A stretch of 64,000 nt of DNA from Phallusia mammillata (lineage: Eukaryota), in the NCBI GenBank assembly GCA_965637545.1, contig OZ281501.1, positions 16,616,001 to 16,680,000 of the forward strand, written 5' to 3'. Shown piece after piece: positions 11,414-33,600 of the stretch; position 1 is the first letter of the stretch, and the number at the start of each line of letters is the position of its first letter. The notes beneath the pieces are model-generated. The model did no database searches. It saw nothing but the letters and a program-made list of their open reading frames with translations, and was not told where the DNA came from. The position numbers were made by a program, and so were the translations under genes.

Positions 11414-12647
11414 TTAGCGACGGCCGAACGGTCGAGGTGTGGTTGGGGCCTCGCATTCTGTTACTTTGCATCCACAGCCCAACACGATATTTTGTGTGTG
11501 TGTTCGTGCTATGCTATCATCGCAAAGCATGAGGAACTCTCTGGGCATAGTCTCCGGCAGACAACACTTGCATTCGCCTGGGAAAAATAAATAAAAAATT
11601 GGTTACATTTGAAGTCAGACCAGATTGGTATCCGAGTAAAGATTTTGTGCTATTAACCTTGTACCATTATACCATAACATGGCACTTATACAAATCAGAA
11701 ATCGAAGCAATACATTGCCCCAAAATTATGGAATTGTCCTCCAAAGGAAGTTAAAAATACAATTTCTACAAGGGAATTTATTTCAATTATCACTTCTTTT
11801 TTGTGCATGATGCGATAGCAACAAATAACTGTAAAGTGGATATTTGGTTCTTAGCAAGGCGCTTTTTGTAGTTTTTCGACATTCCTCCACTCCACGTCAC
11901 CCCACAAGGTCTCACTTACCAACGCACACTTGATAAACCGCATGTTTTTTTGGCCACTAATGTTATTATTGCCGTTGTGTGTGTTCTTCCTTCCGGCGCT
12001 TAAAACTATCCGGTAGGGATTCTTTCGGTGCTTTCTTTTCCTGTCATACACTACCCTATTTCCCTAACATGGGTGGTTAGTTTATAGGCCCTCTCGACTG
12101 GTCCCACCAACGTTCCCTTCCGGTCGTGTTTATCAACACCGCACCAATTTTACTTTCCTGTGAGCCCCAGTCTCCTAACGCTTTATACTACTGTGTAGCT
12201 GCAGCGCGATTAGGTGTCGTCCACCAATTGTGCTTTTCACTGTTTTGCGCTCCATTACGCAGCTACTTCTGGCTTGGAGATCGTTTTTAGTCCTATTGTG
12301 TCGCTATGTTTCTTTCACCTAGCAAAATAAACTCAACTCAAGTTTGCAGCTTCTCGCTTTATGTGGGTGACTTTGTCTAAAAGTAAATGTTGCTGTGAAT
12401 AAATAAGGCTGAGTATTTATCGTTACTTTGTTGATTCCTGGGTAACCCTGACGTGCACCAACTAAAGATAATGGTTAATTACCTTCCATTTCCCCAGTAA
12501 CATCGTTGATTGTGTGTTTAGTGGGACAAGAACCGACACAGAAACTAATTTCAACTTGACCAGAAGTCCAGCATTCGTGGCTGTCAACTGTTGCGTTCAA
12601 CCTTGCTGTTTCAATTCCAACTTCACACGGGAAAGTGGTTTCCTCAC
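11414..12647 (-). CDS. C-terminal cystine knot (CTCK) exons of the giant gene
   Basis: Exons 12647-12483 and 11577-11414 encode [42 protein letters not shown]. This is the 11-Cys CTCK pattern (CxGxC, CxCC, CxC) typical of VWF and mucin C-termini. Confidence 0.88.
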
Positions 12648-15600
12648 CTATGGGTACAACACAAAATATTTACAGGAGAAATATTCTTTCGATATTAAAA
12701 CCTACAAACAAAACAAAAACCAAGTGTCACAATTTTTCAGTACTCATATTTTAAACACTCCAACTACTTTATGTCATTCAGCAATTCTTGAATCCAAAAC
12801 TTACAGTATTTGCAGCAGTTATCGGTTGAGCTGTTGGTTCTTTCCTTTCCACCCTTAGCAAGGCATTCAGCTAAGTCAAACGGAGGACATGCATATTTTT
12901 CGTAAGCATTTATGTAGGGACAGTTGGATGTTTCGTTTACCGCACATGCGGCCGCACGACAGCGATCATCCAATCTTATGCTTGTGTTGACCTGAACGAG
13001 AATGTGTTTTGATTAAATTTGATTAAAATCGCGTACAAGTTGGTCCTTATAAGAATTGACTTTTGTAATAGGCCTTGATAGCAGAGTTCTGCTCTCTGTT
13101 GAACTAAAAAACTGTTTTTGGTTTATTATCGCGTTTTTTTGAGGTTATTAAGATCGTTTGGTATAGAGATCCCTTTGTCCAAAACTGCAAAACCATCGGG
13201 ACCTTAAAAAACTAGCGTCCATGAAAACGTTCTCGTCTAAACGAAAGATACCATCTGAAATATTTGTATTTAAACGCAAATATCTAATTTGAATTCAAAG
13301 ACTGTTGTTCTCTGTCATAATGAATACCACTTACCGGATATTCGACGTTTTCCATTACACATTTATCGCACTCGCATGTGTATTGCGGGCAGTAACCGGA
13401 GTTGGTTTGAATGCGTTTCTGGCCAAGTTTGCAAGTGAAATTCCATTGTTCGCACGGCGTGCACTCGTAACTTGGACAGCAGGGACCCGTTACATTGTTT
13501 CGTTGTTGTATCTAAAAAAGATATGCGGTTAAAGAATGGATCGGTAACAACTAAGATATACTGTGTGGAAGACATGCAATGGAAATAAACAAGCAAGTTT
13601 ATGCCTTTACAAAGCAAAACAAGTGCCTGTTACTACATACGCAGTTGACGTTTGACTTGATTCGGAAATTGCGAAAACAGTTTGTAAGGATGTTCATTTA
13701 CGATTGGGCTTACCGTTGTTTTTTCATGGCCAACTGGGCAAGAGAAATCATCCCACTGATCGCAAGCAGAACTTAGGGTCGAATCATCTTCACAAACACA
13801 GGAGTATTCGGGGCAGCAGTCCCTGGTGTTCTCTATTGTGCCAGTCCGCACTGACTGCATGTATTTCGGACATGTCTCATTTTCAGTTACGTTGAAGCAG
13901 GAAAGTTCCAATGCCATCTCTTCCTTGCACACACAAGAGTAGCCTTGACAACAGGGGTTGGAGTCAGGTGTTTGTTCAAACTTTATTGCCATCTGATAAG
14001 GCGTGCAGTGAATATGCTCATAAGCTGTCTCCGAATCACACTGCAATCTTGGATCGTTTGTGGTGGTTTCAACGCGACATGTCGTGCTATTCTCCGGGTC
14101 CTCATGTAATGGAGAGCAACTCTTCGTTATCATACAACCGTCACCCGCATCTATTTTCCGAGTTGTCCCAATTGCTACAGGTTTACCGTTGATCATACAC
14201 ACGTCGCATATACAACTGTATTTCGGACAGCAATTGTTTGTGAGTGGATCTGTCTCGGAGGACTCAGATAGAGAATGGTTTGCTGGACACATCGGTTTGG
14301 TACAGTTGTCATGGCTGTCTTGGCATACAATTTTGTATCGAGGACAACATTTCTGACCCGGGTTTTCTTCAATTGTCTGAGGCTCGTACTTTTCATACGG
14401 CATAAGAGGTGTAGGGTAGGGTGTGTACTCTATCGGGCATTGAGAACAGGTGCAGTTGTAGTAAGGACAGCACTGTCCATCAACTGGGGTACGTTGGCGT
14501 TCTTCTCCAAAACCACATTCGATGTTGTAGCCTGAGCAATGCGAATCTAGTTCGGGTTGTCCGTAACACTCGCACGTGAGAGTTTCACAACAGTTGTTGG
14601 TGACTTCATATGTTGAGTTCATTCTTCCCTCCATGTCACATTGTTTTTCAGTGACCCTAGACTTTGGACAATTCTTCATCAACATGGTTTCGTTGTTGCA
14701 CACGCATTTATATTCCGGGCAACACTGTTCTGATGAAGATTCCACAAGCTCAGCGTGTTCGTAACCTTTCAGGCAGTTGCCCTCAAATGTGTCCTTGTCT
14801 ACACACGACAAACTTTCGTTGTATGTTACTGACATGGTGTAACATGAATCGGCTTGCTGTGGCGCAGAGCAAGACCACGTGACTGTACATCCGTTTTCGG
14901 TTCCGTTAAAGTATTCACCAACATTGACACGTGAATTGTCAGGCGCTTCGCAACTGTCGCAGATGCAGTTCCATTTGGTGCAACAATCATCTAATGTTGT
15001 GATATCTTGTGCCAAGTAACCTGGATCGCACTCTGGTTTGTTGTCGTCGCACGTTTTGCAAGTACAGTCGTACACTGGGCAGCAAGGACTGTCAGGATTG
15101 GTACCGGGTTGACTTGTTATTGTCACTTCCCTGTCATCCCTGGTGCATGCATCGTTGGTTGAATTGTATTCGGGACAAAGATTTTTAAGTTGCTTTATGT
15201 CCTCGTTGCATGTGCAGTTGTATGTGGGATAACATCGTTCCTCATTTGCAGGATATTTAGTCTTCATCTCGCCAGGATAATCGCATGTTATTTCCTCATT
15301 TACTCGGGTTGTGTTGCACTCTATGAAATGAAAGTAAAGTAATTTGAAACTTTTCTATTAAACTCACATATATTAGCTCATTCCAAAATGTTTCCATTTC
15401 GTATCAGATGCAAAATCCATGTGAAAAACACACATCGCAGGAGATTATTGACCTCCCTATTTGAGCTATACGTGTAATGGTACTTACCACAATCATAGTC
15501 TGGACAACATTTTTCGTTTTCTATTTTCACAGCATATTCTCCTTCTCGCTTGCAATGGCGTGTCTCGAATTCTTCTTTGGTTGTACAGTTGAACGGTACT

Positions 15601-18600
15601 AAACAAAATCGCAAAGTAAAGTCGTTAGTTGACTGAGTAAACAGAATGCAAGCAATCTGGTTTCAGTTCGTTATTGGCGATTACAAATATGTTAGCACTT
15701 CACAGGTTTAAAAAAATGTTTTAGTTTAACAGTAAAAACAATTTTCTTACCACAATCATATTCCTCGCAGCAAGGTTCAGGGTCTTCGTCGGGACTTGCG
15801 TATACCTTCTTACTCTGGGTAGTGCAACGAGGACAAACCTCCGATTCGCAAACAGGAAACGTTTCAGGTACAAAGCAACCATCTTCACCGCGGGCTGTGT
15901 TCCTGCATGTGTAGTTTCTAAGACATCTGTCATCGCCTCTTGCCTGCCAGGAGCTGTCAACTTCTCGAGTGACGTTGTTGTTATCTTTGCACGACGAACA
16001 CACGCATTTTGATTTCTTGCAGCCGCAAGTATCTGTTTCAGATATCTCTTTGTAGCCATCTGGGCACGAAGATACCTGGAATAAACAATTTTTTCAACTG
16101 TTTTGGTGCCTAAACATCACTTGGTACAGCGTACAATACTAGGGTTTGTTTCTCTATTTCTGTGTTTGCGTACAAATGATTGACACCTGATATTGTAAAA
16201 GTAAAATACTTCTTGTTGGGAGTTGGCTTAGGAATTGTTATATGTGTCCTCCTTGTGTGGACTGATTCTACATGTTTAATGTTTGTTTATTTTAACATTT
16301 TTATCTAATTGGCCACAATGTTTCACGAATATTACAGATATAACTGAAATGTTCATCCAATGTTTTAAACAGGCTTTTTGTACCTGTGATTGACATGATT
16401 TGCATACACAAGCATAGTCAGGACAGCACGGGTTAGATGATGTAGTGTTGAGTTCTACAACTTCACGATTGTCATCAAAACAACTGATAAAGGCATTCTG
16501 ATATGTATGACATCTATTCTGATATTCTGTCGAATCATTGTAACATTCACAACGAGTACAAAGTCTCGAGCCTTCGAAATATTCCACCTGCTTCTGTCCA
16601 GGATAAGAGCAAGTTTCATTGCGGCATGCTGGAAGATAATAAACAAAAAATAATTTAGTAACATCAAGTTTTCATGCAACGGGCCCAGTATTTGCCCGAA
16701 ACAAGTAATTTTGATTGTTTAAAGGAGCTAACATAGAGAGGACTATTTTGGAGATCAGCACTTTAAATATGAGTAGTTATTTGTTTGCATTGTTTGTGTT
16801 ACACGTTCTTTTTTCATTCCAAGCATATGAAGGTATACTTTTGTTGTTTTCAAATGTTCACAACGTGTTTTTAAAGGAAACATTCAACGGCAAGTGCTGC
16901 AATTAAAATAGGATACGTTTTGTTACCCTCTCTTGGTCTTTATTGTATGTCAAAAACATCTGTACTTGAAAATAAATAAAGCTAAAGCAAACCCAAAAGT
17001 TTAGTTATTTTATAATTTTCCGGAAGTGTACTTACCGCAGTCGTATTTTTTGCAACAAGATGAAGTGTCTGTCTCTACTGTCTCACGGTTGTTCGGCTTA
17101 CAATTGTGAAAGTCGAACTCATCTTTGCTCTCACAGGTCAAACTCTCGTTTTTGTAAACCGTCAGCTCGTAACATGACTCTCCTGCTTTTTTGTTGTCTG
17201 AACACATGTATTGTATCAAGCATCCATTGTCATCGGTCATATTCACTGAAGAGCCACGGGATATGAGGGTACCGTTGCCTATGTCACAAGAATTGCAAGT
17301 GCAGTTTGACCAATTGGAACAACAGTCTTCATCGGTTTTCAGATCCTCTGTAATGTAACCAGTCTTACAGCTTGGTGGCGATGAGTTCTCACATGTTTTG
17401 CAAAAGCAGTTGTATTTCGGACAACATGGGGAGCTTGGGTCGCTTCCTGCTGGCTCCGATTCCACTGCTTTCTTGTCAGACGTACAATTTGCTTCTTCAA
17501 ACTGTGTGGCTGTTTGGCAATCCATCCGAGGGTCGTAGGTTGTTACTGGTGTGCGGCATGTGGTCGTATTATCCGGGTTCTCATGTTGAGCGGAACAACT
17601 CTTCGTTATCATACAACCTTCGCCCACGTCCTCATTCCAAGTTTCATTGATCGCTACAGGGTTACCGTCGATCATACACACGTCGCACACACAGCTGTAT
17701 ATCGGACAGCAGTTGTTGGTGAGTGGGTCAGTCTCGGTGGAAACAGATACAGAGTGGTTTTTCGGGCATTCCGGTTCGGAACAGTTGTCATGGCTTTCTT
17801 GGCATACAATTTTATACCGAGGACAACATTTCTGAGCCGGATTTTCTTGTATCGTCAGAGGCTCGTACTTTTCATACGGCTTGAGAGGTGTAGGGTAGGG
17901 TATGTACTCTATCGGGCATTGAGAGCAGGTGCAGTTGTAGTAAGGACAGCACTGTCCATCAACTGGGGTACGTTGGCGTTCTTCTCCAAAACCACATTCG
18001 ATGTTGTAGCCTGAGCAATGCGAATCTAGTTCCGGTTGTCCGTAACACTCGCACGTGAGAGTTTCACAACAGTTGTTGGTGACTTCATACGTTGAGTTCA
18101 TTCTTCCCTCCATGTTACAATCTTCTTCAGTGACACTAGACTCTGGACAATTCTTCATCAACATGGTTTCGTTGTTGCACACGCATTTATATTCTGGGCA
18201 ACACTGTTCTGATGAAGATTCCACAAGCTCAGCGTGTTCGTAACCTTTCAGGCAGTTGCCCTCAAATGTGTCCTTCTCTATACACGACAAACTTTCGTTG
18301 TATGTTGCTGACATGGTGTAACATAAATCGGCTTGCTGTGGCGTAGAGCAAGACCACGTGACTTTACATCCGTTTTCGGTTCCGTTAAAGTCTTCACCAA
18401 CATTGACACGTGAATTGTCAGGCGCTTCGCAACTGTCGCAGATGCAGTTCCATTTGGTGCAACAATCATCTAATGTTGTGATATCTTGTGCCAAGTAACC
18501 TGGATCGCACTCTGGTTTGTTGTCGTCGCACGTTTTGCAAGTACAGTCGTACACTGGGCAGCAAGGACTGTCAGGATTGGTACCGGGTTGACTTGTTATT

Positions 18601-21600
18601 GTCACTTCCCTGTCATCCCTGGTGCATGCATCGTTGGTTGAATTGTATCCGGGACAAAGATTTTTAAGTTGCTTTATGTCCTCGTTGCATGTGCAGTTGT
18701 ATGTGGGATAACATCGTTCCTCATTTGCAGGATATTTAGTCTTCATCTCGCCAGGATAATCGCATGTTATTTCCTCATTTACTCGGGTTGTGTTGCACTC
18801 TATGAAATGAAAGTAAAGTAATTTGAAACTTTTCTATTAAACTCACATATTTTAGCTCATTCCAAAATGTTTCCATTTTGTATCAGATGCAAAATCCATG
18901 TCAAAAACACACATCGCAGGAGATTATTGACCTCCCTATTTGAGCTATACGTGTAATGGTACTTACCACAATCATAGTCTGGACAACATTTTTCGTTTTC
19001 TATTTTCACAGCATATTCTCCTTCTCGCTTGCAATGGCGTGTCTCGAATTCTTCTTTGGTTGTACAGTTGAACGGTACTAAACAAAATCGCAAAGTAAAG
19101 TCGTTAGTTGACTGAGTAAACAGAATGCAAGCAATCTGGTTTCAGTTCGTTATTGGCGATTACAAATATGTTAGCACATCACAGGTTTAAAAAATGTTTT
19201 AGTTTAACAGTAAAAACAATTTTCTTACCACAATCATATTCCTCGCAGCAAGGTTCAGGGTCTTCGTCGGGATTTGCGTATACCTTCTTACTCTGGGTAG
19301 TGCAACGAGGGCAAACCTCCGATTCGCAAACAGGAAACGTTTCAGGTACAAAGCAACCATCTTCACCGCGGGCTGTGTTCCTGCATGTGTAGTTTCTAAG
19401 ACATCTGTCATCGCCTCTTGCCTGCCAGGAGCTGTCAACTTCTCGAGTGACGTTGTTGTTATCTTTGCACGACGAACACACGCACTTTGATTTCTTGCAG
19501 CCGCAAGTATCTGTTTCAGATATCTCTTTGTAGCCATCTGGGCACGAAGATACCTGGAATAAACAAATTTTTCAACTGTTTTGGTGCCTAAACATCACTT
19601 GGTACAGCGTACAATACTAGGGTTTGTTTCTCTATTTCTGTGTTTGCGTACAAATGATTGGTACCTGATATTGTAAAAGTAAAATACTTCTTGTTGGGAG
19701 TTGGCTTAGGAATTGTTATATGTGTCCTCCTTGTATGGACTGATTCTACATGTTTAATGTTTGTTTATTTTAACATTTTTATCTAATTGGCCACAATGTT
19801 TCACGAATATTACAGATATAACTGAAATGTTTATCCAATGTTTTAAACAAGCTTTTTGTACCTGTGATTGACATGATTTGCATACACAAGCATAGTCGGG
19901 ACAGCACGGGTTAGATGATGTAGTGTTGAGTTCTACCACTTCACGATTGTCATCAAAACAACTGATAAAGGCATTCAGATATGTATGACATCTATTCTGA
20001 TATTCTGTCGAATCATTGTAACATTCACAACGAGTACAAAGTCTCGAGCCTTCGAAATATTCCACCTGCTTCTGTCCAGGATAAGAGCAAGTTTCATTGC
20101 GGCATGCTGGAAGATAATAAACAAAAAATAATTTAGTAACATCAAGTTTTCATGCAACGGGGTCAGTGTTTTCCTGAAACAAGTAATTTTGATTGTTTAA
20201 AGGAGCTAACATAGAAAGGACTATTTTGGAGATCAGCATCTTTAAATATGAGTAGTTATTTGTTTGCATTGTTTGTGTTACAGGTTTTTGCTTCATTTCC
20301 AGCATATGAAGGTATACTTTTATTGTTTTCAAATGTTCACAACGTGTTTATAAAGGAAACATTCAACGGCAAGTGCTGCAATCAAAATAGGATACGTTTT
20401 GTTACCCTCTCTTGGTCTTTATTGTATGTCAAAAACATCTGTACTTGAAAATAAATAAAGCTAAAGCAAACCCAAAAGTTTAGTTATTTTATAATTTTCC
20501 GGAAGTGTACTTACCGCAGTCGTATATTTTGCAACAAGATGAAGTGTCTGTCTCTACTGTCTCACGGTTGTTCGGCTTACAATTGTGAAAGTCGAACTCA
20601 TCTTTGCTCTCACAGGTCAAACTCTCGTTTTTGTAAACCGTCAGCTCGTAACATGACTCTCCTGCTTTTTTGTTGTCTGAACACATGTATTGTATCAAGC
20701 ATCCATTGTCATCGGTCATATTCACTGAAGAGCCACGGGATATGAGGGTACCGTTGCCTATGTCACAAGAATTGCAAGTGCAGTTTGACCAATTGGAACA
20801 ACAATCTTCATCAGTTTTCAGATCCTCTGTAATGTAACCAGTCTTACAGCTTGGTGGCGATGAGTTCTCACATGTTTTGCAAAAGCAGTTGTATTTCGGA
20901 CAACATGGGGAGCTTGGGTCGCTTCCTGCTGGCTCCGATTCCACTGCTTTCTTGTCAGACGTACAATTTGCTTCTTCAAACTGTGTGGCTGTTTGGCAAT
21001 CCATCCGAGGGTCGTAGGTTGTTACTGGTGTGCGGCATGTGGTCGTATTATCCGGGTTCTCATGTTGAGCGGAACAACTCTTCGTTATCATACAACCTTC
21101 GCCCACGTCCTCATTCCAAGTTTCATTGATCGCTACAGGGTTACCGTCGATCATACACACGTCGCACACACAGCTGTATATCGGACAGCAGTTGTTGGTG
21201 AGTGGGTCAGTCTCGGTGGAAACAGATACAGAGTGGTTTTTCGGGCATTCCGGTTCGGAACAGTTGTCATGGCTTTCTTGGCATACAATTTTATACCGAG
21301 GACAACATTTCTGAGCCGGATTTTCTTCTATCGTCAGAGGCTCGTACTTTTCATACGGCTTGAGAGGTGTAGGGTAGGGTATGTACTCTATCGGGCATTG
21401 AGAGCAGGTGCAGTTGTAGTAAGGACAGCACTGTCCATCAACTGGGGTACGTTGGCGTTCTTCTCCAAAACCACATTCGATGTTGTAGCCTGAGCAATGC
21501 GAATCTAGTTCCGGTTGTCCGTAACACTCGCACGTGAGAGTTTCACAACAGTTGTTGGTGACTTCATACGTTGAGTTCATTCTTCCCTCAATGTTACAAT

Positions 21601-24600
21601 CTTCTTCAGTGACACTAGACTCTGGACAATTCTTCATCAACATGGTTTCGTTGTTGCACACGCATTTATATTCTGGGCAACACTGTTCTGATGAAGATTC
21701 CACAAGCTCAGCGTGTTCGTAACCTTTCAGGCAGTTGCCCTCAAATGTGTCCTTCTCTATACACGACAAACTTTCGTTGTATGTTACTGACATGGTGTAA
21801 CATGAATCGGCTTGCTGTGGCGCAGAGCAAGACCACGTGACTTTACATCCGTTTTCGGTTCCGTTAAAGTCTTCACCAACATTGACACGTGAATTGTCAG
21901 GCGCTTCGCAACTGTCGCAGATGCAGTTCCATTTGGTGCAACAATCATCTAATGTTGTGATATCTTGTGCCAAGTAACCTGGATCGCACTCTGGTTTGTT
22001 GTCGTCGCACGTTTTGCAAGTACAGTCGTACACTGGGCAGCAAGGACTGTCAGGATTGGTACCGGGTTGACTTGTTATTGTCACTTCCCTGTCATCCCTG
22101 GTGCATGCATCGTTGGTTGAATTGTATCCGGGACAAAGATTTTTAAGTTGCTTTATGTCCTCGTTGCATGTGCAGTTGTATGTGGGATAACATCGTTCCT
22201 CATTTGCAGGATATTTAGTCTTCATCTCGCCAGGATAATCGCATGTTATTTCCTCATTTACTCGGGTTGTGTTGCACTCTATGAAATGAAAGTAAAGTAA
22301 TTTGAAACTTTTCCATTAAACTCACATATATTAGCTCATTCCAAAATGTTTCCATTTCGTATCAGATGCAAAATCCATGTCAAAAACACACATCGCAGGA
22401 GATTATTGACCTCCCTATTTGAGCTATACGTGTAATGGTACTTACCACAATCATAGTCTGGACAACATTTTTCGTTTTCTATTTTCACAGCATATTCTCC
22501 TTCTCGCTTGCAATGGCGTGTCTCGAATTCTTCTTTGGTTGTACAGTTGAACGGTACTAAACAAAATCGCAAAGTAAAGTCGTTAGTTGACTGAGTAAAC
22601 AGAATGCAAGCAATCTGGTTTCAGTTCGTTATTGGCGATTACAAATATGTTAGCACTTCACAGGTTTAAAAAAATGTTTTAGTTTAACAGTAAAAACAAT
22701 TTTCTTACCACAATCATATTCCTCGCAGCAAGGTTCAGGGTCTTCGTCGGGACTTGCGTATACCTTCTTACTCTGGGTAGTGCAACGAGGACAAACCTCC
22801 GATTCGCAAACAGGAAACGTTTCAGGTACAAAGCAACCATCTTCACCGCGGGCTGTGTTCCTGCATGTGTAGTTTCTAAGACATCTGTCATCGCCTCTTG
22901 CCTGCCAGGAGCTGTCAACTTCTCGAGTGACGTTGTTGTTATCTTTGCACGACGAACACACGCATTTTGATTTCTTGCAGCCGCAAGTATCTGTTTCAGA
23001 TATCTCTTTGTAGCCATCTGGGCACGAAGATACCTGGAATAAACAATTTTTTCAACTGTTTTGGTGCCTAAACATCACTTGGTACAGCGTACAATACTAG
23101 GGTTTGTTTCTCTATTTCTGTGTTTGCGTACAAATGATTGACACCTGATATTGTAAAAGTAAAATACTTCTTGTTGGGAGTTGGCTTAGGAATTGTTATA
23201 TGTGTCCTCCTTGTGTGGACTGATTCTACATGTTTAATGTTTGTTTATTTTAACATTTTTATCTAATTGGCCACAATGTTTCACGAATATTACAGATATA
23301 ACTGAAATGTTCATCCAATGTTTTAAACAAGCTTTTTGTACCTGTGATTGACATGATTTGCATACACAAGCATAGTCAGGACAGCACGGGTTAGATGATG
23401 TAGTGTTGAGTTCTACAACTTCACGATTGTCATCAAAACAACTGATAAAGGCATTCTGATATGTATGACATCTATTCTGATATTCTGTCGAATCATTGTA
23501 ACATTCACAACGAGTACAAAGTCTCGAGCCTTCGAAATATTCCACCTGCTTCTGTCCAGGATAAGAGCAAGTTTCATTGCGGCATGCTGGAAGATAATAA
23601 ACAAAAAATAATTTAGTAACATCAAGTTTTCATGCAACGGGCCCAGTATTTGCCCGAAACAAGTAATTTTGATTGTTTAAAGGAGCTAACATAGAGAGGA
23701 CTATTTTGGAGATCAGCACTTTAAATATGAGTAGTTATTTGTTTGCATTGTTTGTGTTACACGTTCTTTTTTCATTCCAAGCATATGAAGGTATACTTTT
23801 GTTGTTTTCAAATGTTCACAACGTGTTTTTAAAGGAAACATTCAACGGCAAGTGCTGCAATTAAAATAGGATACGTTTTGTTACCCTCTCTTGGTCTTTA
23901 TTGTATGTCAAAAACATCTGTACTTGAAAATAAATAAAGCTAAAGCAAACCCAAAAGTTTAGTTATTTTATAATTTTCCGGAAGTCTACTTACCGCAGTC
24001 GTATTTTTTGCAACAAGATGAAGTGTCTGTCTCTACTGTCTCACGGTTGTTCGGCTTACAATTGTGAAAGTCGAACTCATCTTTGCTCTCACAGGTCAAA
24101 CTCTCGTTTTTGTAAACCGTCAGCTCGTAACATGACTCTCCTGCTTTTTTGTTGTCTGAACACATGTATTGTATCAAGCATCCATTGTCATCGGTCATAT
24201 TCACTGAAGAGCCACGGGATATGAGGGTACCGTTGCCTATGTCACAAGAATTGCAAGTGCAGTTTGACCAATTGGAACAACAGTCTTCATCGGTTTTCAG
24301 ATCCTCTGTAATGTAACCAGTCTTACAGCTTGGTGGCGATGAGTTCTCACATGTTTTGCAAAAGCAGTTGTATTTCGGACAACATGGGGAGCTTGGGTCG
24401 CTTCCTGCTGGCTCCGATTCCACTGCTTTCTTGTCAGACGTACAATTTGCTTCTTCAAACTGTGTGGCTGTTTGGCAATCCATCCGAGGGTCGTAGGTTG
24501 TTACTGGTGTGCGGCATGTGGTCGTATTATCCGGGTTCTCATGTTGAGCGGAACAACTCTTCGTTATCATACAACCTTCGCCCACGTCCTCATTCCAAGT

Positions 24601-27600
24601 TTCATTGATCGCTACAGGGTTACCGTCGATCATACACACGTCGCACACACAGCTGTATATCGGACAGCAGTTGTTGGTGAGTGGGTCAGTCTCGGTGGAA
24701 ACAGATACAGAGTGGTTTTTCGGGCATTCCGGTTCGGAACAGTTGTCATGGCTTTCTTGGCATACAATTTTATACCGAGGACAACATTTCTGAGCCGGAT
24801 TTTCTTCTATCGTCAGAGGCTCGTACTTTTCATACGGCTTGAGAGGTGTAGGGTAGGGTATGTACTCTATCGGGCATTGAGAGCAGGTGCAGTTGTAGTA
24901 AGGACAGCACTGTCCATCAACTGGGGTACGTTGGCGTTCTTCTCCAAAACCACATTCGATGTTGTAGCCTGAGCAATGCGAATCTAGTTCCGGTTGTCCG
25001 TAACACTCGCACGTGAGAGTTTCACAACAGTTGTTGGTGACTTCATACGTTGAGTTCATTCTTCCCTCAATGTTACAATCTTCTTCAGTGACACTAGACT
25101 CTGGACAATTCTTCATCAACATGGTTTCGTTGTTGCACACGCATTTATATTCTGGGCAACACTGTTCTGATGAAGATTCCACAAGCTCAGCGTGTTCGTA
25201 ACCTTTCAGGCAGTTGCCCTCAAATGTGTCCTTCTCTATACACGACAAACTTTCGTTGTATGTTACTGACATGGTGTAACATGAATCGGCTTGCTGTGGC
25301 GCAGAGCAAGACCACGTGACTTTACATCCGTTTTCGGTTCCGTTAAAGTCTTCACCAACATTGACACGTGAATTGTCAGGCGCTTCGCAACTGTCGCAGA
25401 TGCAGTTCCATTTGGTGCAACAATCATCTAATGTTGTGATATCTTGTGCCAAGTAACCTGGATCGCACTCTGGTTTGTTGTCGTCGCACGTTTTGCAAGT
25501 ACAGTCGTACACTGGGCAGCAAGGACTGTCAGGATTGGTACCGGGTTGACTTGTTATTGTCACTTCCCTGTCATCCCTGGTGCATGCATCGTTGGTTGAA
25601 TTGTATCCGGGACAAAGATTTTTAAGTTGCTTTATGTCCTCGTTGCATGTGCAGTTGTATGTGGGATAACATCGTTCCTCATTTGCAGGATATTTAGTCT
25701 TCATCTCGCCAGGATAATCGCATGTTATTTCCTCATTTACTCGGGTTGTGTTGCACTCTATGAAATGAAAGTAAAGTAATTTGAAACTTTTCTATTAAAC
25801 TCACATATATTAGCTCATTCCAAAATGTTTCCATTTCGTATCAGATGCAAAATCCATGTCAAAAACACACATCGCAGGAGATTATTGACCTCCCTATTTG
25901 AGCTATACGTGTAATGGTACTTACCACAATCATAGTCTGGACAACATTTTTCGTTTTCTATTTTCACAGCATATTCTCCTTCTCGCTTGCAATGGCGTGT
26001 CTCGAATTCTTCTTTGGTTGTACAGTTGAACGGTACTAAACAAAATCGCAAAGTAAAGTCGTTAGTTGACTGAGTAAACAGAATGCAAGCAATCTGGTTT
26101 CAGTTCGTTATTGGCGATTACAAATATGTTAGCACTTCACAGGTTTAAAAAAATGTTTTAGTTTAACAGTAAAAACAATTTTCTTACCACAATCATATTC
26201 CTCGCAGCAAGGTTCAGGGTCTTCGTCGGGACTTGCGTATACCTTCTTACTCTGGGTAGTGCAACGAGGACAAACCTCCGATTCGCAAACAGGAAACGTT
26301 TCAGGTACAAAGCAACCATCTTCACCGCGGGCTGTGTTCCTGCATGTGTAGTTTCTAAGACATCTGTCATCGCCTCTTGCCTGCCAGGAGCTGTCAACTT
26401 CTCGAGTGACGTTGTTGTTATCTTTGCACGACGAACACACGCATTTTGATTTCTTGCAGCCGCAAGTATCTGTTTCAGATATCTCTTTGTAGCCATCTGG
26501 GCACGAAGATACCTGGAATAAACAATTTTTTCAACTGTTTTGGTGCCTAAACATCACTTGGTACAGCGTACAATACTAGGGTTTGTTTCTCTATTTCTGT
26601 GTTTGCGTACAAATGATTGACACCTGATATTGTAAAAGTAAAATACTTCTTGTTGGGAGTTGGCTTAGGAATTGTTATATGTGTCCTCCTTGTGTGGACT
26701 GATTCTACATGTTTAATGTTTGTTTATTTTAACATTTTTATCTAATTGGCCACAATGTTTCACGAATATTACAGATATAACTGAAATGTTCATCCAATGT
26801 TTTAAACAAGCTTTTTGTACCTGTGATTGACATGATTTGCATACACAAGCATAGTCAGGACAGCACGGGTTAGATGATGTAGTGTTGAGTTCTACAACTT
26901 CACGATTGTCATCAAAACAACTGATAAAGGCATTCTGATATGTATGACATCTATTCTGATATTCTGTCGAATCATTGTAACATTCACAACGAGTACAAAG
27001 TCTCGAGCCTTCGAAATATTCCACCTGCTTCTGTCCAGGATAAGAGCAAGTTTCATTGCGGCATGCTGGAAGATAATAAACAAAAAATAATTTAGTAACA
27101 TCAAGTTTTCATGCAACGGGCCCAGTATTTGCCCGAAACAAGTAATTTTGATTGTTTAAAGGAGCTAACATAGAGAGGACTATTTTGGAGATCAGCACTT
27201 TAAATATGAGTAGTTATTTGTTTGCATTGTTTGTGTTACACGTTCTTTTTTCATTCTAAGCATATGAAGGTATACTTTTGTTGTTTTCAAATGTTCACAA
27301 CGTGTTTTTAAAGGAAACATTCAACGGCAAGTGCTGCAATTAAAATAGGATACGTTTTGTTACCCTCTCTTGGTCTTTATTGTATGTCAAAAACATCTGT
27401 ACTTGAAAATAAATAAAGCTAAAGCAAACCCAAAAGTTTAGTTATTTTATAATTTTCCGGAAGTCTACTTACCGCAGTCGTATTTTTTGCAACAAGATGA
27501 AGTGTCTGTCTCTACTGTCTCACGGTTGTTCGGCTTACAATTGTGAAAGTCGAACTCATCTTTGCTCTCACAGGTCAAACTCTCGTTTTTGTAAACCGTC

Positions 27601-30600
27601 AGCTCGTAACATGACTCTCCTGCTTTTTTGTTGTCTGAACACATGTATTGTATCAAGCATCCATTGTCATCGGTCATATTCACTGAAGAGCCACGGGATA
27701 TGAGGGTACCGTTGCCTATGTCACAAGAATTGCAAGTGCAGTTTGACCAATTGGAACAACAATCTTCATCAGTTTTCAGATCCTCTGTAATGTAACCAGT
27801 CTTACAGCTTGGTGGCGATGAGTTCTCACATGTTTTGCAAAAGCAGTTGTATTTCGGACAACATGGGGAGCTTGGGTCGCTTCCTGCTGGCTCCGATTCC
27901 ACTGCTTTCTTGTCAGACGTACAATTTGCTTCTTCAAACTGTGTGGCTGTTTGGCAATCCATCCGAGGGTCGTAGGTTGTTACTGGTGTGCGGCATGTGG
28001 TCGTATTATCCGGGTTCTCATGTTGAGCGGAACAACTCTTCGTTATCATACAACCTTCGCCCACGTCCTCATTCCAAGTTTCATTGATCGCTACAGGGTT
28101 ACCGTCGATCATACACACGTCGCACACACAGCTGTATATCGGACAGCAGTTGTTGGTGAGTGGGTCAGTCTCGGTGGAAACAGATACAGAGTGGTTTTTC
28201 GGGCATTCCGGTTCGGAACAGTTGTCATGGCTTTCTTGGCATACAATTTTATACCGAGGACAACATTTCTGAGCCGGATTTTCTTCTATCGTCAGAGGCT
28301 CGTACTTTTCATACGGCTTGAGAGGTGTAGGGTAGGGTATGTACTCTATCGGGCATTGAGAGCAGGTGCAGTTGTAGTAAGGACAGCACTGTCCATCAAC
28401 TGGGGTACGTTGGCGTTCTTCTCCAAAACCACATTCGATGTTGTAGCCTGAGCAATGCGAATCTAGTTCGGGTTGTCCGTAACACTCGCACGTGAGAGTT
28501 TCACAACAGTTGTTGGTGACTTCATACGTTGAGTTCATTCTTCCCTCAATGTTACAATCTTCTTCAGTGACACTAGACTCTGGACAATTCTTCATCAACA
28601 TGGTTTCGTTGTTGCACACGCATTTATATTCTGGGCAACACTGTTCTGATGAAGATTCCACAAGCTCAGCGTGTTCGTAACCTTTCAGGCAGTTGCCCTC
28701 AAATGTGTCCTTCTCTATACACGACAAACTTTCGTTGTATGTTACTGACATGGTGTAACATGAATCGGCTTGCTGTGGCGCAGAGCAAGACCACGTGACT
28801 TTACATCCGTTTTCGGTTCCGTTAAAGTCTTCACCAACATTGACACGTGAATTGTCAGGCGCTTCGCAACTGTCGCAGATGCAGTTCCATTTGGTGCAAC
28901 AATCATCTAATGTTGTGATATCTTGTGCCAAGTAACCTGGATCGCACTCTGGTTTGTTGTCGTCGCACGTTTTGCAAGTACAGTCGTACACTGGGCAGCA
29001 AGGACTGTCAGGATTGGTACCGGGTTGACTTGTTATTGTCACTTCCCTGTCATCCCTGGTGCATGCATCGTTGGTTGAATTGTATCCGGGACAAAGATTT
29101 TTAAGTTGCTTTATGTCCTCGTTGCATGTGCAGTTGTATGTGGGATAACATCGTTCCTCATTTGCAGGATATTTAGTCTTCATCTCGCCAGGATAATCGC
29201 ATGTTATTTCCTCATTTACTCGGGTTGTGTTGCACTCTATGAAATGAAAGTAAAGTAATTTGAAACTTTTCTATTAAACTCACATATATTAGCTCATTCC
29301 AAAATGTTTCCATTTCGTATCAGATGCAAAATCCATGTCAAAAACACACATCGCAGGAGATTATTGACCTCCCTATTTGAGCTATACGTGTAATGGTACT
29401 TACCACAATCATAGTCTGGACAACATTTTTCGTTTTCTATTTTCACAGCATATTCTCCTTCTCGCTTGCAATGGCGTGTCTCGAATTCTTCTTTGGTTGT
29501 ACAGTTGAACGGTACTAAACAAAATCGCAAAGTAAAGTCGTTAGTTGACTGAGTAAACAGAATGCAAGCAATCTGGTTTCAGTTCGTTATTGGCGATTAC
29601 AAATATGTTAGCACTTCACAGGTTTAAAAAAATGTTTTAGTTTAACAGTAAAAACAATTTTCTTACCACAATCATATTCCTCGCAGCAAGGTTCAGGGTC
29701 TTCGTCGGGACTTGCGTATACCTTCTTACTCTGGGTAGTGCAACGAGGACAAACCTCCGATTCGCAAACAGGAAACGTTTCAGGTACAAAGCAACCATCT
29801 TCACCGCGGGCTGTGTTCCTGCATGTGTAGTTTCTAAGACATCTGTCATCGCCTCTTGCCTGCCAGGAGCTGTCAACTTCTCGAGTGACGTTGTTGTTAT
29901 CTTTGCACGACGAACACACGCATTTTGATTTCTTGCAGCCGCAAGTATCTGTTTCAGATATCTCTTTGTAGCCATCTGGGCACGAAGATACCTGGAATAA
30001 ACAATTTTTTCAACTGTTTTGGTGCCTAAACATCACTTGGTACAGCGTACAATACTAGGGTTTGTTTCTCTATTTCTGTGTTTGCGTACAAATGATTGAC
30101 ACCTGATATTGTAAAAGTAAAATACTTCTTGTTGGGAGTTGGCTTAGGAATTGTTATATGTGTCCTCCTTGTGTGGACTGATTCTACATGTTTAATGTTT
30201 GTTTATTTTAACATTTTTATCTAATTGGCCACAATGTTTCACGAATATTACAGATATAACTGAAATGTTCATCCAATGTTTTAAACAAGCTTTTTGTACC
30301 TGTGATTGACATGATTTGCATACACAAGCATAGTCAGGACAGCACGGGTTAGATGATGTAGTGTTGAGTTCTACAACTTCACGATTGTCATCAAAACAAC
30401 TGATAAAGGCATTCTGATATGTTTGACATCTATTCTGATATTCTGTCGAATCATTGTAACATTCACAACGAGTACAAAGTCTCGAGCCTTCGAAATATTC
30501 CACCTGCTTCTGTCCAGGATAAGAGCAAGTTTCATTGCGGCATGCTGGAAGATAATAAACAAAAAATAATTTAGTAACATCAAGTTTTCATGCAACGGGC

Positions 30601-33600
30601 CCAGTATTTGCCCGAAACAAGTAATTTTGATTGTTTAAAGGAGCTAACATAGAGAGGACTATTTTGGAGATCAGCACTTTAAATATGAGTAGTTATTTGT
30701 TTGCATTGTTTGTGTTACACGTTCTTTTTTCATTCCAAGCATATGAAGGTATACTTTTGTTGTTTTCAAATGTTCACAACGTGTTTTTAAAGGAAACATT
30801 CAACGGCAAGTGCTGCAATTAAAATAGGATACGTTTTGTTACCCTCTCTTGGTCTTTATTGTATGTCAAAAACATCTGTACTTGGAAATAAATAACACTA
30901 AAGCAAACCCAAAAGTTTAGTTATTTTATACTTTTCCGGAAGTGTACTTACCGCAGTCGTATATTTTGCAACAAGATGAAGTGTCTGTCTCTACTGTCTC
31001 ACGGTTGTTCGGCTTACAATTGTGAAAGTCGAACTCATCTTTGCTCTCACAGGTCAAACTCTCGTTTTTGTAAACCGTCAGCTCGTAACATGACTCTCCT
31101 GCTTTTTTGTTGTCTGAACACATGTATTGTATCAAGCATCCATTCTCATCGGTCATATTCACTGAAGAGCCACGGGATATGAGGGTACCGTTGCCTATGT
31201 CACAAGAATTGCAAGTGCAGTTTGACCAATTGGAACAACAGTCTTCATCGGTTTTCAGATCCTCTGTAATGTAACCAGTCTTACAGCTTGGTGGCGATGA
31301 GTTCTCACATGTTTTGCAAAAGCAGTTGTATTTCGGACAACATGGGGAGCTTGGGTCGCTTCCTGCTGGCTCCGATTCCACTGCTTTCTTGTCAGACGTA
31401 CAATTTGCTTCTTCAAACTGTGTGGCTGTTTGGCAATCCATCCGAGGGTCGTAGGTTGTTACTGGTGTGCGGCATGTGGTCGTATTATCCGGGTTCTCAT
31501 GTTGAGCGGAACAACTCTTCGTTATCATACAACCTTCGCCCACGTCCTCATTCCAAGTTTCATTGATCGCTACAGGGTTACCGTCGATCATACACACGTC
31601 GCACACACAGCTGTATATCGGACAGCAGTTGTTGGTGAGTGGGTCAGTCTCGGTGGAAACAGATACAGAGTGGTTTTTCGGGCATTCCGGTTCGGAACAG
31701 TTGTCATGGCTTTCTTGGCATACAATTTTATACCGAGGACAACATTTCTGAGCCGGATTTTCTTCTATCGTCAGAGGCTCGTACTTTTCATACGGCTTGA
31801 GAGGTGTAGGGTAGGGTATGTACTCTATCGGGCATTGAGAGCAGGTGCAGTTGTAGTAAGGACAGCACTGTCCATCAACTGGGGTACGTTGGCGTTCTTC
31901 TCCAAAACCACATTCGATGTTGTAGCCTGAGCAATGCGAATCTAGTTCCGGTTGTCCGTAACACTCGCACGTGAGAGTTTCACAACAGTTGTTGGTGACT
32001 TCATACGTTGAGTTCATTCTTCCCTCAATGTTACAATCTTCTTCAGTGACACTAGACTCTGGACAATTCTTCATCAACATGGTTTCGTTGTTGCACACGC
32101 ATTTATATTCTGGGCAACACTGTTCTGATGAAGATTCAACAAGCTCAGCGTGTTCGTAACCTTTCAGGCAGTTGCCCTCAAATGTGTCCTTCTCTATACA
32201 CGACAAACTTTCGTTGTATGTTACTGACATGGTGTAACATGAATCGGCTTGCTGTGGCGCAGAGCAAGACCACGTGACTTTACATCCGTTTTCGGTTCCG
32301 TTAAAGTCTTCACCAACATTGACACGTGAATTGTCAGGCGCTTCGCAACTGTCGCAGATGCAGTTCCATTTGGTGCAACAATCATCTAATGTTGTGATAT
32401 CTTGTGCCAAGTAACCTGGATCGCACTCTGGTTTGTTGTCGTCGCACGTTTTGCAAGTACAGTCGTACACTGGGCAGCAAGGACTGTCAGGATTGGTACC
32501 GGGTTGACTTGTTATTGTCACTTCCCTGTCATCCCTGGTGCATGCATCTTTGGTTACATTGTATTCGGGACAAAGATTTTCAAGTTTTTTCATGTCCTCG
32601 TTACAAGTGCAGTTGTAAGTGGGATAGCAATGTGTTTCATTAGGTGGATACTCTGTTAAGTCTTCGCCAGGCAGATCGCAAGCTGGTTCCTCGGGTGCCC
32701 CAGTTTCGTTGCAAGCTGAAAATAGAAAAGAAAGGGTGGTGTATAGTTATACAGTTTTTGTATTCAGACACTTTGTACTTACAGCATTGGAACTGAGGAC
32801 AGCATGTGGCAATGTCAATTTGGTCGGCATATTCACCGACTCTTGTGCAATATTCTTTTTCGTATTCAGCTTTTGTTGTACAGTTGTCTTTTTGATTGCC
32901 TAACGTTTCTGATCTGTAGCAAGCATTGGAATCGTTTGATTCTCTAACTTCCAAGCAGCGCACCGTCTTGTTGCACAAATCGTTGTCGATGTAAGTGTGG
33001 GTGGCCCCGATATCCAAATTGACTCCGTAGGGGAGCTTGCACTTATTGCAGACACATTCGTATTCTGGACAACACCCTTCAGTTGGTATCTTGTTAAGGG
33101 TTTGCCATTCAAGACAGGTTGGCGGTTCGTTACACGAGCAACCTGTTTAAAAAAATTCTTTAGTGCATCGGTTCCTAACCTTTCTGGTGTCGTGACCCCC
33201 AGATAACAGTTGCCAAGTTGCGGTGACACCAAGGACAAAATTAGTATGCTTTTAAAATTGACTGAATTTTTTTCTCAACAACGAAGTGGTCCATGGGTTT
33301 ATTTTATTGGGGCTAGTGGTCCATTGCCTGAAACTAGTTGGGAACCATTGCTTTAGGCGACCCCAGGCAAATTGTCAGACGACTCTAGTTAGGGTCGCGA
33401 CCCACAGGTTGGGAACCGCTGCTTTAGTGGATCCAAGAGTCAATTTGGCGATTTGGGGAAATATTTTAAACAAGGTTTGAACTATCGAGAGGTTCGTAAA
33501 AAACCTAAACAACTTTTGTTTGTATGACGTAACCTAGTCGTAGTCTGTTCACTTACATTCGGTTTTAACGCACTCTGTCGTACTGGCGTCTCGTCTTACG

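What the first reader, a model, noticed from the sequence alone, without database searches (positions are those of the whole stretch)
13714..32715. Gene grows by tandem duplication of a 3.48-kb four-exon cassette with near-identical introns
Seen: five full 3,479-bp units plus a partial sixth A exon, adding 815 aa each. The introns are almost as identical as the exons, which coding selection cannot explain. Inference: the duplication is very recent or is homogenised by unequal crossing-over, so the locus is probably a copy-number-polymorphic coding VNTR whose unit includes introns. Mucin VNTRs normally sit inside one exon, so a multi-exon unit is unusual. Protein length, and so mesh spacing or fibre length, could vary between individuals.
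Basis: partly seen in the sequence, partly recalled or inferred. Interest (0 to 1): 0.8.

Follow-up and report, generated by a model that had tools for sequence, protein, structure and literature searches.

The report
Multi-exon tandem repeat in VWF-like gene
A sea-squirt gene for a giant von Willebrand-factor/mucin-like secreted protein has recently copied a 3.5-kb block of four exons plus their introns five times in a row, adding about 4,600 residues. This is a real, transcribed example of a known way for genes to grow, but nobody has yet shown that copy number varies between animals.

Summary
Window 14074-32626 is a tandem array with a 3,479-bp period and 5.33 units. It lies on the minus strand inside a roughly 50-kb VWF/gel-forming-mucin-like gene.

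**Structure.** Each unit holds exon A (1,764 nt), B (245), C (325) and D (111), with introns of 407, 308, 152 and 167 nt. All introns are GT..AG, phases are constant, and each unit codes 815 aa. The 21 exons read through 4,610 codons without a stop.

**Expression.** A spliced transcript contig joins C5, D5 and A6 exactly at the predicted borders.

**Age and exchange.**
- Introns are as alike as exons (0.1-0.6% divergence).
- Unit 4 is a mosaic.
- Four-gamete violations occur between units.
- The edge copies decay in identity.

Together these point to recent unequal exchange between two older paralogous A-type exons, with continued exchange afterwards.

**Copy number.** Contig k-mer depth in one run fits about five copies. 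A second run gives conflicting ratios. No spanning reads were available, so copy-number polymorphism stays untested.

**Domain type.** The modules match no Pfam family. Their predicted fold weakly resembles VWC/FnI.

**Novelty.** Multi-exon coding repeats are already known (LPA KIV-2), so this is a new member of a known kind. The scan noted this same stretch under another title, and a paralogue next door was followed up earlier.

The parts
11414..61317 (-). Whole VWF/gel-forming-mucin-like gene. Start codon at about 61317. Order of parts: signal peptide, TSP1, CUB, EGF-like, three N-terminal VWD-C8-TIL assemblies, cysteine-rich exons, a fourth VWD-C8-TIL, the array, then a C-terminal cystine knot with stop at 11416-11414.
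   Evidence: Open frames on the minus strand. Pfam hits: TSP_1 1e-8, CUB 4e-15, C8 1e-17 and 1e-18, TIL 9e-7, VWD 3e-9, 7e-6 and 3e-11. Only the array and its flanks were modelled exon by exon.
33552..36505 (-). Last VWD-C8-TIL assembly (D4-like), directly upstream of the array.
   Evidence: Pfam VWD 3e-11 (36350-36505) and 6.5e-5 (35405-35707), C8 3e-5 (34537-34725), TIL 5e-6 (33552-33770).
32784..33146 (-). Exon before the array. It holds one copy of the same roughly 120-aa supermodule and ends in phase 1 at a GTAAGT donor.
   Evidence: Local hmmsearch hit at 33143-32784. The sequence shows the donor and the acceptor of A1.
14074..32626 (-). Extent of repeat similarity: 5.33 units of 3,479 bp.
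   Evidence: Self-BLAST and the repeat finder.
30952..32715 (-). Exon A1. Its first 170 nt or so are only 62-90% like A2-A5; the rest is 99.8% identical.
   Evidence: dS 0.51 and dN 0.21 in codons 1-57.
15321..30951 (-). Intron 1 of unit 1 through intron 4 of unit 5.
- A2: 29236-27473
- A3: 25757-23994
- A4: 22278-20515
- A5: 18799-17036
- B1-B5: 30544-30300, 27065-26821, 23586-23342, 20106-19862, 16628-16384
- C1-C5: 29991-29667, 26512-26188, 23033-22709, 19553-19229, 16075-15751
- D1-D5: 29514-29404, 26035-25925, 22556-22446, 19077-18967, 15598-15488
   Evidence: Splice motifs and GT/AG checked in every unit. No stop across the 21 exons.
13714..15320 (-). Exon A6, the diverged terminal copy. 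Identity to A2-A5 is 100% for about 600 nt, then falls through 98, 92, 80 and 59%, and the sequences cannot be aligned after about 1,400 nt. Its 3' end is colinear with the last big exon of the paralogues.
   Evidence: RNA contig on 13760-15320.
18967..20383 (-). Older-looking segment of unit 4 (unit positions 1896-3428), holding all 31 of unit 4's private differences. Sixteen of them lie in about 220 bp of intron 1.
11417..13512 (-). Post-array exons: 13512-13334, about 13012-12767, and the cystine-knot exons at about 12669-12478 and 11576-11417.
   Evidence: Acceptor and donor read. CxGxC and CxCC motifs are visible in the frames. Pfam Cys_knot reaches only E 0.041, below its cut-off. An RNA contig ends its match at 11576.

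Best explanation
This is a real, transcribed, in-frame amplification inside a giant secreted VWF/mucin-like gene of a sea squirt.

**Starting state (inferred).** The gene had two old, diverged A-type exons separated by exons B, C and D.

**First event (inferred).** Unequal homologous exchange between the two A-type exons created a 3,479-bp unit. Its inner A exons are chimeras: the 5' part is of the downstream type and the 3' part of the upstream type.

**Later events (inferred).** Further rounds of unequal exchange or gene conversion raised the number to five full units. They keep the units, introns included, nearly identical, and they are overwriting the two edge copies from the inside out.

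**Why every gain or loss stays in frame (shown).** The unit codes 815 codons, and the exon phases are 1-1, 1-0, 0-1 and 1-1. Any gain or loss of whole units therefore keeps the frame and an even cysteine count (106 per unit).

**Effect on the protein (inferred).** The array adds a long, disulfide-rich, N-glycan-rich, acidic rod of VWC/FnI-like modules. It sits between the last D assembly and the C-terminal cystine knot, where VWF carries its C1-C6 stem. Changing unit number would change the distance between the two polymerisation ends of the monomer.

**Shown versus inferred.** Shown: anatomy, splicing of C5-D5-A6, intron identity, mosaicism. Inferred: the exchange mechanism, its ongoing nature, the rod and spacer role.
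For: **Array and exon anatomy.**

**Continuous reading.** 4,610 codons with no stop, 597 Cys, 139 N-x-S/T sequons.

**Transcription and splicing.** Run X4 contig 27 lies on 13760-15320, 15488-15598 and 15751-16006, which are exactly A6, D5 and C5. Contig 30 runs 29 nt past the A5 donor at 17036.

**Intron versus exon divergence.**. U2-U3: 3 synonymous and 0 non-synonymous changes, 2 intron changes.

**Exchange between units.** Sites 1466/1475 against 1753/1772 show all four gametes. Private variants of unit 4 are confined to one 1.5-kb segment, while its A exon is homogenised.

**Chimeric inner A exons and decaying edges.**. A6 aligns over its whole length with the terminal big exon of a paralogue (39%, residues 102-535) and with P0001. 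Inner A exons stop aligning at about residue 467.

**Multi-copy state outside the assembly.** In run X1 the contig depth is 973-1,124 over repeat parts against about 190-230 in the flank.

**Distinct unit types.** At least four are distinguishable (U1, U2/3, U4, U5), which argues against simple stacking of two haplotypes.

**Gene context.** Pfam TSP1, CUB, VWD, C8 and TIL.

**Module fold.** AF2 pLDDT 85.7. Matches: NELL2 VWC at E 6e-3; FnI at Z 5; VWF C4 at Z 4.1; CCN3 and collagen IIA VWC at Z 3.1-3.7. Atlas rows are otogelin, VWD-C8-Cys_knot and Sog at TM 0.40-0.48.
Against: - No read spanning the array was seen, so the exact number of units in this haplotype rests on the assembly and on a rough depth ratio.
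- Run X2 gives inconsistent ratios (2.0-3.6x over B-D, 6.4x over A). The tool warns that contig depth is not a copy number.
- Only four parsimony-informative sites carry the four-gamete result, so recurrent mutation is not excluded.
- Fold matches are all below the level that the tools call clear (Z under 8, TM under 0.5). Pfam VWC does not match.
- The tissue of expression and the function of the protein are unknown.
Confidence: 0.75

Rival explanations
1. Assembly artefact. The true locus has fewer (or more) units, and the assembler mis-counted near-identical 3.5-kb copies or laid two haplotypes in tandem.
For: Units 2 and 3 differ at only 5 of 3,479 positions, which is hard to resolve. No spanning reads were available. 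Run X2 gives only 2.0-3.6x flank depth over B-D.
Against: - Run X1 gives 4.4-5.1x flank depth over the repeat.
- In X2 the A-type contig is at 6.4x, close to the six A copies assembled.
- At least four unit types with private variants exist, more than two haplotypes could give.
- The period is exact, and every unit keeps frame and splice sites.

An error of one unit either way cannot be excluded. A wholesale artefact is unlikely.
Confidence: 0.12
2. A single very recent burst of duplication with no continuing exchange. The units are alike only because they are young.
For: Divergence among units 2, 3 and 5 is 0.1-0.4% in exons and introns alike. That is below the flank divergence between individuals.
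Against: A simple burst predicts differences spread evenly and compatible with one tree. Instead:
- Unit 4 carries 31 private changes in one 1.5-kb segment beside an A exon with none.
- Informative sites conflict.
- A6 shows a graded decay, not a sharp breakpoint.
Confidence: 0.1
3. Old duplicates kept alike by purifying selection on the protein.
For: The exons are intact and transcribed.
Against: Introns are as identical as exons, and synonymous sites are barely diverged. Selection on the protein does not explain either.
Confidence: 0.02

Closest known systems
LPA kringle IV type 2 (KIV-2) coding repeat of humans
   Same: A kilobase-scale tandem unit that contains several exons and their introns. 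It is in frame, so each unit adds a whole protein module. Units are nearly identical. The repeat makes up most of the coding sequence (abstracts of PMC6314250 and PMC11201333).
   Different: KIV-2 has a 5.6-kb unit with two exons encoding one kringle, and its copy number is proven to vary widely between people. Here the unit is 3.5 kb with four exons and about twelve cysteine modules (815 aa), and no variation between individuals has been shown.
C1-C6 (VWC) stem of von Willebrand factor, and the C-terminal VWC domains of gel-forming mucins, including Ciona Ci-GFM1
   Same: Same position in the protein, between the D4 assembly and the C-terminal cystine knot. The shared scaffold D1-D2-D'D3-D4-VWC-CK is described in PMC6109156. 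Each module ends with CC-x4-C. The predicted fold has weak VWC/FnI likeness.
   Different: Pfam VWC does not match and the cysteine spacing differs from the canonical CxxCxC. There are about 64 modules instead of two to six. The gene has no VWA or PTS region and carries a TSP1-CUB-EGF cap.
Neighbouring paralogues in the same cluster (C8 16.68-16.78 Mb), one described earlier in this scan as a CUB-capped VWF-like polymer gene
   Same: Same strand, same domain order and same module family, at 30-44% identity to exon A.
   Different: The paralogues hold old, mutually diverged exons of these modules. Only this gene carries a near-identical multi-exon array.
Mucin PTS repeats (single-exon VNTRs)
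   Same: A repetitive central part that sets the length of a polymer-forming secreted protein.
   Different: Mucin VNTRs lie inside one large exon (abstract of PMC13345508) and are Pro/Thr/Ser-rich and O-glycosylated. This unit spans four exons, is 13% cysteine, is acidic (141 D+E against 71 K+R) and has 25 N-glycosylation sequons.
Other multi-exon intragenic repeats recalled from memory and not checked here: complement receptor 1 long homologous repeats, the nebulin triplicate region, FCGBP, DMBT1
   Same: Blocks of several exons with their introns repeated in tandem at high identity, some of them copy-number variable.
   Different: Different proteins and lineages. Listed only to show that the kind is established.

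Membership tests
VWF / gel-forming mucin scaffold proteins | Three N-terminal VWD-C8-TIL assemblies | tested here: met
   Pfam VWD, C8 and TIL hits on exons between 58000 and 42000. Not every exon of each assembly was scanned.
VWF / gel-forming mucin scaffold proteins | A fourth D assembly followed by VWC-type modules | tested here: met
   VWD, C8 and TIL at 36505-33552. The modules that follow are VWC-like by fold only.
VWF / gel-forming mucin scaffold proteins | C-terminal cystine knot | tested here: inconclusive
   CxGxC and CxCC...CxC motifs are visible in the last two exons. Pfam Cys_knot reaches only E 0.041, or 14.6 bits against a cut-off of 24, because the domain is split over exons that were searched apart.
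Gel-forming mucin in the strict sense | Central Pro/Thr/Ser-rich, O-glycosylated domain | tested here: not met
   The repeat unit is 13% Cys and only 24% S+T+P, with no PTS run. No PTS-like frame was seen.
VWC domain (Pfam PF00093) | Sequence match to the family profile | tested here: not met
   No hit at E up to 1 for exons A-D, for 23 module copies or for relatives from other species.
VWC domain (Pfam PF00093) | Two-subdomain fold: an FnI-like SD1 plus an SD2 ending in CC-x-C | tested here: inconclusive
   - AF2 model pLDDT 85.7.
- Foldseek NELL2 VWC at E 6e-3, probability 0.98.
- VIA-align: FnI Z 5.0, VWF C4 Z 4.1 over residues 32-121, CCN3 VWC Z 3.7, collagen IIA VWC Z 3.1.
- Atlas rows at TM 0.40-0.48.
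- Language-model lead for VWC at 0.78.

All of these are below the tools' level for a clear match.
Coding VNTR (copy-number-polymorphic tandem repeat inside a gene) | Tandem, in-frame, near-identical units | tested here: met
Coding VNTR (copy-number-polymorphic tandem repeat inside a gene) | Different unit numbers in different individuals or haplotypes | tested here: inconclusive
   Only k-mer contigs were available. Depth ratios are 4.4-5.1x in X1 and 2.0-6.4x in X2. There is no alternate haplotype in the assembly.
Concerted evolution by unequal crossing-over or gene conversion | Recombinant (mosaic) units and less-homogenised edge copies | tested here: met
   Mosaic unit 4. Four-gamete violations, though on few sites. 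Graded decay of A1 and A6.

The most novel reading that the evidence does not exclude
The array is a population-variable length ruler. Animals would carry different numbers of the 815-aa unit, and identical splice sites might also let units be skipped. The rod between the D assemblies and the cystine knot would then differ in length, and with it the spacing of nodes in a secreted polymer such as the pharyngeal filter net. Textbook pores of that net are 0.2-0.5 by 0.5-2.2 um (bioRxiv 10.1101/2025.01.21.634085). That would give a heritable, stepwise tuning of a filter-feeding trait.
Probability: 0.07. Interest if true: 0.7.

Novelty: new member of a known kind. Interest (0 to 1): 0.35.

Why it matters
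This is a clean, transcribed example of how a giant extracellular protein gains thousands of residues at once. The route is unequal exchange between paralogous phase-1 exons, and the traces of the process are still readable in the sequence: chimeric inner exons, decaying edges and a mosaic unit.

If unit number does vary between animals, the locus would give a natural length series of a VWF-like polymer in the closest invertebrate relatives of vertebrates. That series could be used to test how monomer length sets polymer architecture.

As it stands, it adds a case to a known class. It also flags a lineage-restricted cysteine-module family: only 9 hits among 1.84 billion representative proteins.

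Tried and rejected
- **Tandem Repeats Finder** cannot see the array, because its longest period is 500. The repeat finder and self-BLAST were used instead.
- **Pfam on exons A-D, on 23 module copies and on foreign relatives:** nothing relevant.
- **PDB sequence search** with exon A and with the module profile: nothing.
- **Word search of 5.8 billion proteins** with exon A and with the profile: nothing. This is probably because annotated relatives are far longer and contig ORFs far shorter than the length window allows.
- **Full HMMER search with the profile:** 9 hits. One is named Ciona savignyi H2Y7H2. One is a tick protein that carries no VWC annotation either.
- **Metagenome contigs carrying a 34%-identical big exon** (L027-L030) were fetched to look for an array in another species. 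All four end about 0.5 kb after the exon and have no internal repeat, so they say nothing.
- **Run X15 ('organism B')** was laid in the hope of a sister-species comparison. It holds only depth-2 contigs almost identical to the window, most likely a trace of organism A.
- **Copy number from contig depth** was tried and judged unreliable.
- It was redone from coordinates.
- **Joined spliced protein.** The only joined reading was a local stop, Cys and sequon count in a script.
Full report
**What is there.**

The window has no gaps. Self-BLAST finds a single family of direct repeats offset by exact multiples of 3,479 bp. It runs from 14074 to 32626 at 98.8% identity between neighbouring registers, and the repeat finder gives the same spacing. 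Tandem Repeats Finder misses the array because its period limit is 500.

Long open frames lie on the minus strand. Reading one unit base by base, then locating the same splice motifs in all units, gives this structure:

| Part | Length | Phase |
|---|---|---|
| Exon A | 1,764 nt | 1-1 |
| Intron 1 | 407 nt (408 in unit 4) | |
| Exon B | 245 nt | 1-0 |
| Intron 2 | 308 nt | |
| Exon C | 325 nt | 0-1 |
| Intron 3 | 152 nt (151 in unit 4) | |
| Exon D | 111 nt | 1-1 |
| Intron 4 | 167 nt | |

Every donor is GT and every acceptor is AG. The exons sum to 2,445 nt, or 815 codons.

A1 begins behind a TTTTCAG acceptor at 32715, and the shortened sixth A exon ends before GTAAGC at 13714. In a local script the 21 exons read as 4,610 codons without a stop, with 597 cysteines and 139 N-x-S/T sequons. 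That joined reading was used only for counting.

**Is it real and used?**

Only Logan contigs, not raw reads, were on offer.

- Run X4 contig 27 (1,928 nt) lies on 13760-15320, then 15488-15598, then 15751-16006. These are A6, D5 and C5, with both introns removed at exactly the predicted borders.
- Another X4 contig runs 29 nt past the A5 donor at 17036, and one covers exon B.

So the locus is transcribed and spliced as modelled, at least for the last unit.

Contig k-mer depth in run X1 is 973-1,124 over repeat parts against about 190-230 in the unique flank, or 4.4-5.1x. That fits five units.

In run X2 the A-type contig is at 6.4x, against six A copies assembled. The B-D contigs, however, are at 2.0-3.6x. 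The tool warns that contig depth is not a copy number, so I treat these figures as support for 'multi-copy' only.

The assembly holds no second haplotype of the locus.

**How alike are the units, and what does the pattern say?**

Pairwise counts on a MAFFT alignment:

| Comparison | Exon divergence | Intron divergence |
|---|---|---|
| Among units 2, 3 and 5 | 0.12-0.33% | 0.19-0.39% |
| Unit 1 (after its first 170 nt) against units 2, 3 and 5 | similar | 0.58% |
| Unit 4 against the others | 0.3-0.6% | 2.4% |

The site list explains unit 4. All 31 of its private changes lie between unit positions 1896 and 3428. Sixteen of them fall in 220 bp of intron 1. Its 1,764-nt A exon has none. Unit 4 is therefore a mosaic: an older B-C-D segment joined to a homogenised A exon.

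The four parsimony-informative sites (1466 and 1475, 1753, 1772) conflict, and all four gametes are present within 306 bp.

Synonymous and non-synonymous changes between inner units are both near zero. U2 and U3 encode identical proteins.

Flank sequence differs between the window and contigs of other runs as follows:

- X1: about 0.5%
- X2: 0.9-1.9%
- X4, over A6: 1.15%

This is more than the units differ from each other. The last copying or exchange events are therefore younger than ordinary allelic differences at this locus. That makes variation in the population plausible, but it does not demonstrate it.

**The edges.**

- A1 is only 62-90% identical to A2-A5 over its first 170 nt or so (dS 0.51) and 99.8% identical afterwards.
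- A6 is 100% identical to A2-A5 for about 600 nt. Identity then falls through 98, 92, 80 and 59%, and the sequences cannot be aligned after about 1,400 nt.
- A6 aligns over its full length with the last large exon of a paralogue (39% over residues 102-535) and with a foreign homologue, P0001. Inner A exons stop aligning near residue 467. Their last 120 residues resemble the ends of the paralogues' 645-nt-type exons.

The inner A exons are thus chimeras, with the 5' part of the downstream type and the 3' part of the upstream type. That is what unequal exchange between two old paralogous exons 3.5 kb apart would produce. The graded decay fits later conversion tracts spreading into the edge copies.

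One further hint comes from the X4 transcript contig. At every listed A6-specific site from 14446 upwards it carries the array-type letter. At the listed sites below that, from 14108 to 14317, it carries the A6 letters. Its 18 differences equal the 18 A6-versus-array differences above 14446. Either the conversion edge differs between individuals or the k-mer contig is a chimera. Contigs cannot tell these apart.

**What gene is it?**

Pfam on single exons gives the following, from the 5' end of the gene:

1. TSP1 (with a signal peptide)
2. CUB
3. VWD, C8 and TIL, repeated
4. A last VWD-C8-TIL at 36505-33552
5. The array
6. Two exons with cystine-knot motifs (Pfam Cys_knot only E 0.041)

This is the D1-D2-D'D3-D4-VWC-CK scaffold shared by VWF, mucins and Ciona Ci-GFM1 (PMC6109156). 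It has no VWA or PTS region.

Three paralogues follow on the same strand within 170 kb. Two of these are 80-95% segmental copies of each other, and none has a comparable array.

My domain reading agrees with it.

The 'sea squirt' origin rests on those notes and on the one named relative, Ciona savignyi H2Y7H2, at 37-39% identity. The species itself is coded and unknown to me.

**What are the modules?**

Each unit holds four copies of a roughly 120-aa supermodule with 13 conserved cysteines, plus shorter 4-6-cysteine modules. Each ends in CC-x4-C, and exon borders in phase 1 fall right after that motif.

- The unit is 13% Cys, acidic (141 D+E against 71 K+R) and has 25 sequons.
- Sequence searches recognise nothing: Pfam, PDB sequences and the word search.
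- A full HMMER search of 1.84 billion representatives with the 23-copy profile finds 9 proteins.
- AlphaFold2 on that alignment gives a confident model, pLDDT 85.7.
- Its best structural neighbours are NELL2 VWC domains (Foldseek E 6e-3), fibronectin type I modules (Z 5.0), VWF C4 (Z 4.1 over residues 32-121), and CCN3 and collagen IIA VWC (Z 3.7 and 3.1).
- Atlas rows are otogelin, VWD-C8-Cys_knot proteins and Sog, at TM 0.40-0.48.
- A language-model lead also points to VWC, at 0.78.

Each match is weak by the tools' own standards. They all agree with the position in the gene, where VWF has its C1-C6 stem. I therefore call the modules VWC/FnI-like and do not file them in Pfam VWC.

**How it probably works.**

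The unit is frame-neutral as a whole and in parts (A, D and B+C are each symmetric). Gain or loss by misaligned exchange anywhere in the unit keeps the frame and keeps the cysteine count even (106 per unit).

The product would be a long disulfide-stapled, N-glycosylated rod between the N-terminal D assemblies and the C-terminal knot. Changing unit number would change the span of the monomer within a polymer. This step is inference.

The textbook pore sizes of the ascidian filter are 0.2-0.5 by 0.5-2.2 um. The same preprint questions the thin-mesh picture and found no mucus-specific peptides.

**Comparison and novelty.**

A tandem coding unit that includes introns is unusual for mucins, whose VNTRs sit in one exon (abstract of PMC13345508). 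It is a known kind, however. The 5.6-kb two-exon KIV-2 unit of LPA is the classic case (PMC6314250 and PMC11201333). From memory, CR1, nebulin, FCGBP and DMBT1 are others. Earlier notes report further exon-cassette arrays in this very genome.

The locus is therefore a new member of a known kind. Its interest lies in its size (815 aa per unit, 4,610 residues in all), the readable record of how it arose, and its place in a barely described, lineage-restricted module family.

**Verdict.**

- Observation: confirmed.
- Interpretation: partly supported.
- Copy-number polymorphism and function: open.

Noticed in passing
window 11900-12340: A stretch in the intron before the last exon has contig depths of 10^4-10^5 in run X1 and 10^3-10^4 in run X2, with many joints and loose ends. 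It is a very high-copy dispersed repeat.
   Followed up: no
window 45344-45632: A 56-bp tandem repeat, 5.2 copies at 88% identity, inside an intron of the same gene.
   Followed up: no
G000:C8:16680001-16780000 (L013-L023): Three further VWF-like paralogues follow on the same strand. Genes 2 and 3 are 80-95% identical segmental duplicates over about 40 kb.
   Followed up: partly
L015:6061-8762 (G000:C8 about 16726061-16728762): A smaller tandem repeat inside paralogue 3, with a period of about 793 bp, 88-92% identity and about 3.4 copies. It overlaps frames that match exon C.
   Followed up: no
window 20107-20383 (intron 1 of unit 4): There are 16 private substitutions plus a 1-bp insertion in about 220 bp (about 7%). 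That is far denser than in the rest of unit 4's old segment (1-2%). The source of this patch is unexplained.
   Followed up: partly
window 14423-14446: The transcript contig of run X4 switches from A6-type to array-type letters here, whereas the assembled A6 keeps its own letters up to about 14913. This is either a polymorphic conversion edge or a k-mer chimera.
   Followed up: partly
L027-L030: Four metagenome contigs (JGI 3300027611 and ENA ERZ272417xx) from one unnamed organism carry a 664-700-aa exon 34-36% identical to exon A and to the last big exon of paralogue 4. All end about 0.5 kb after it.
   Followed up: partly
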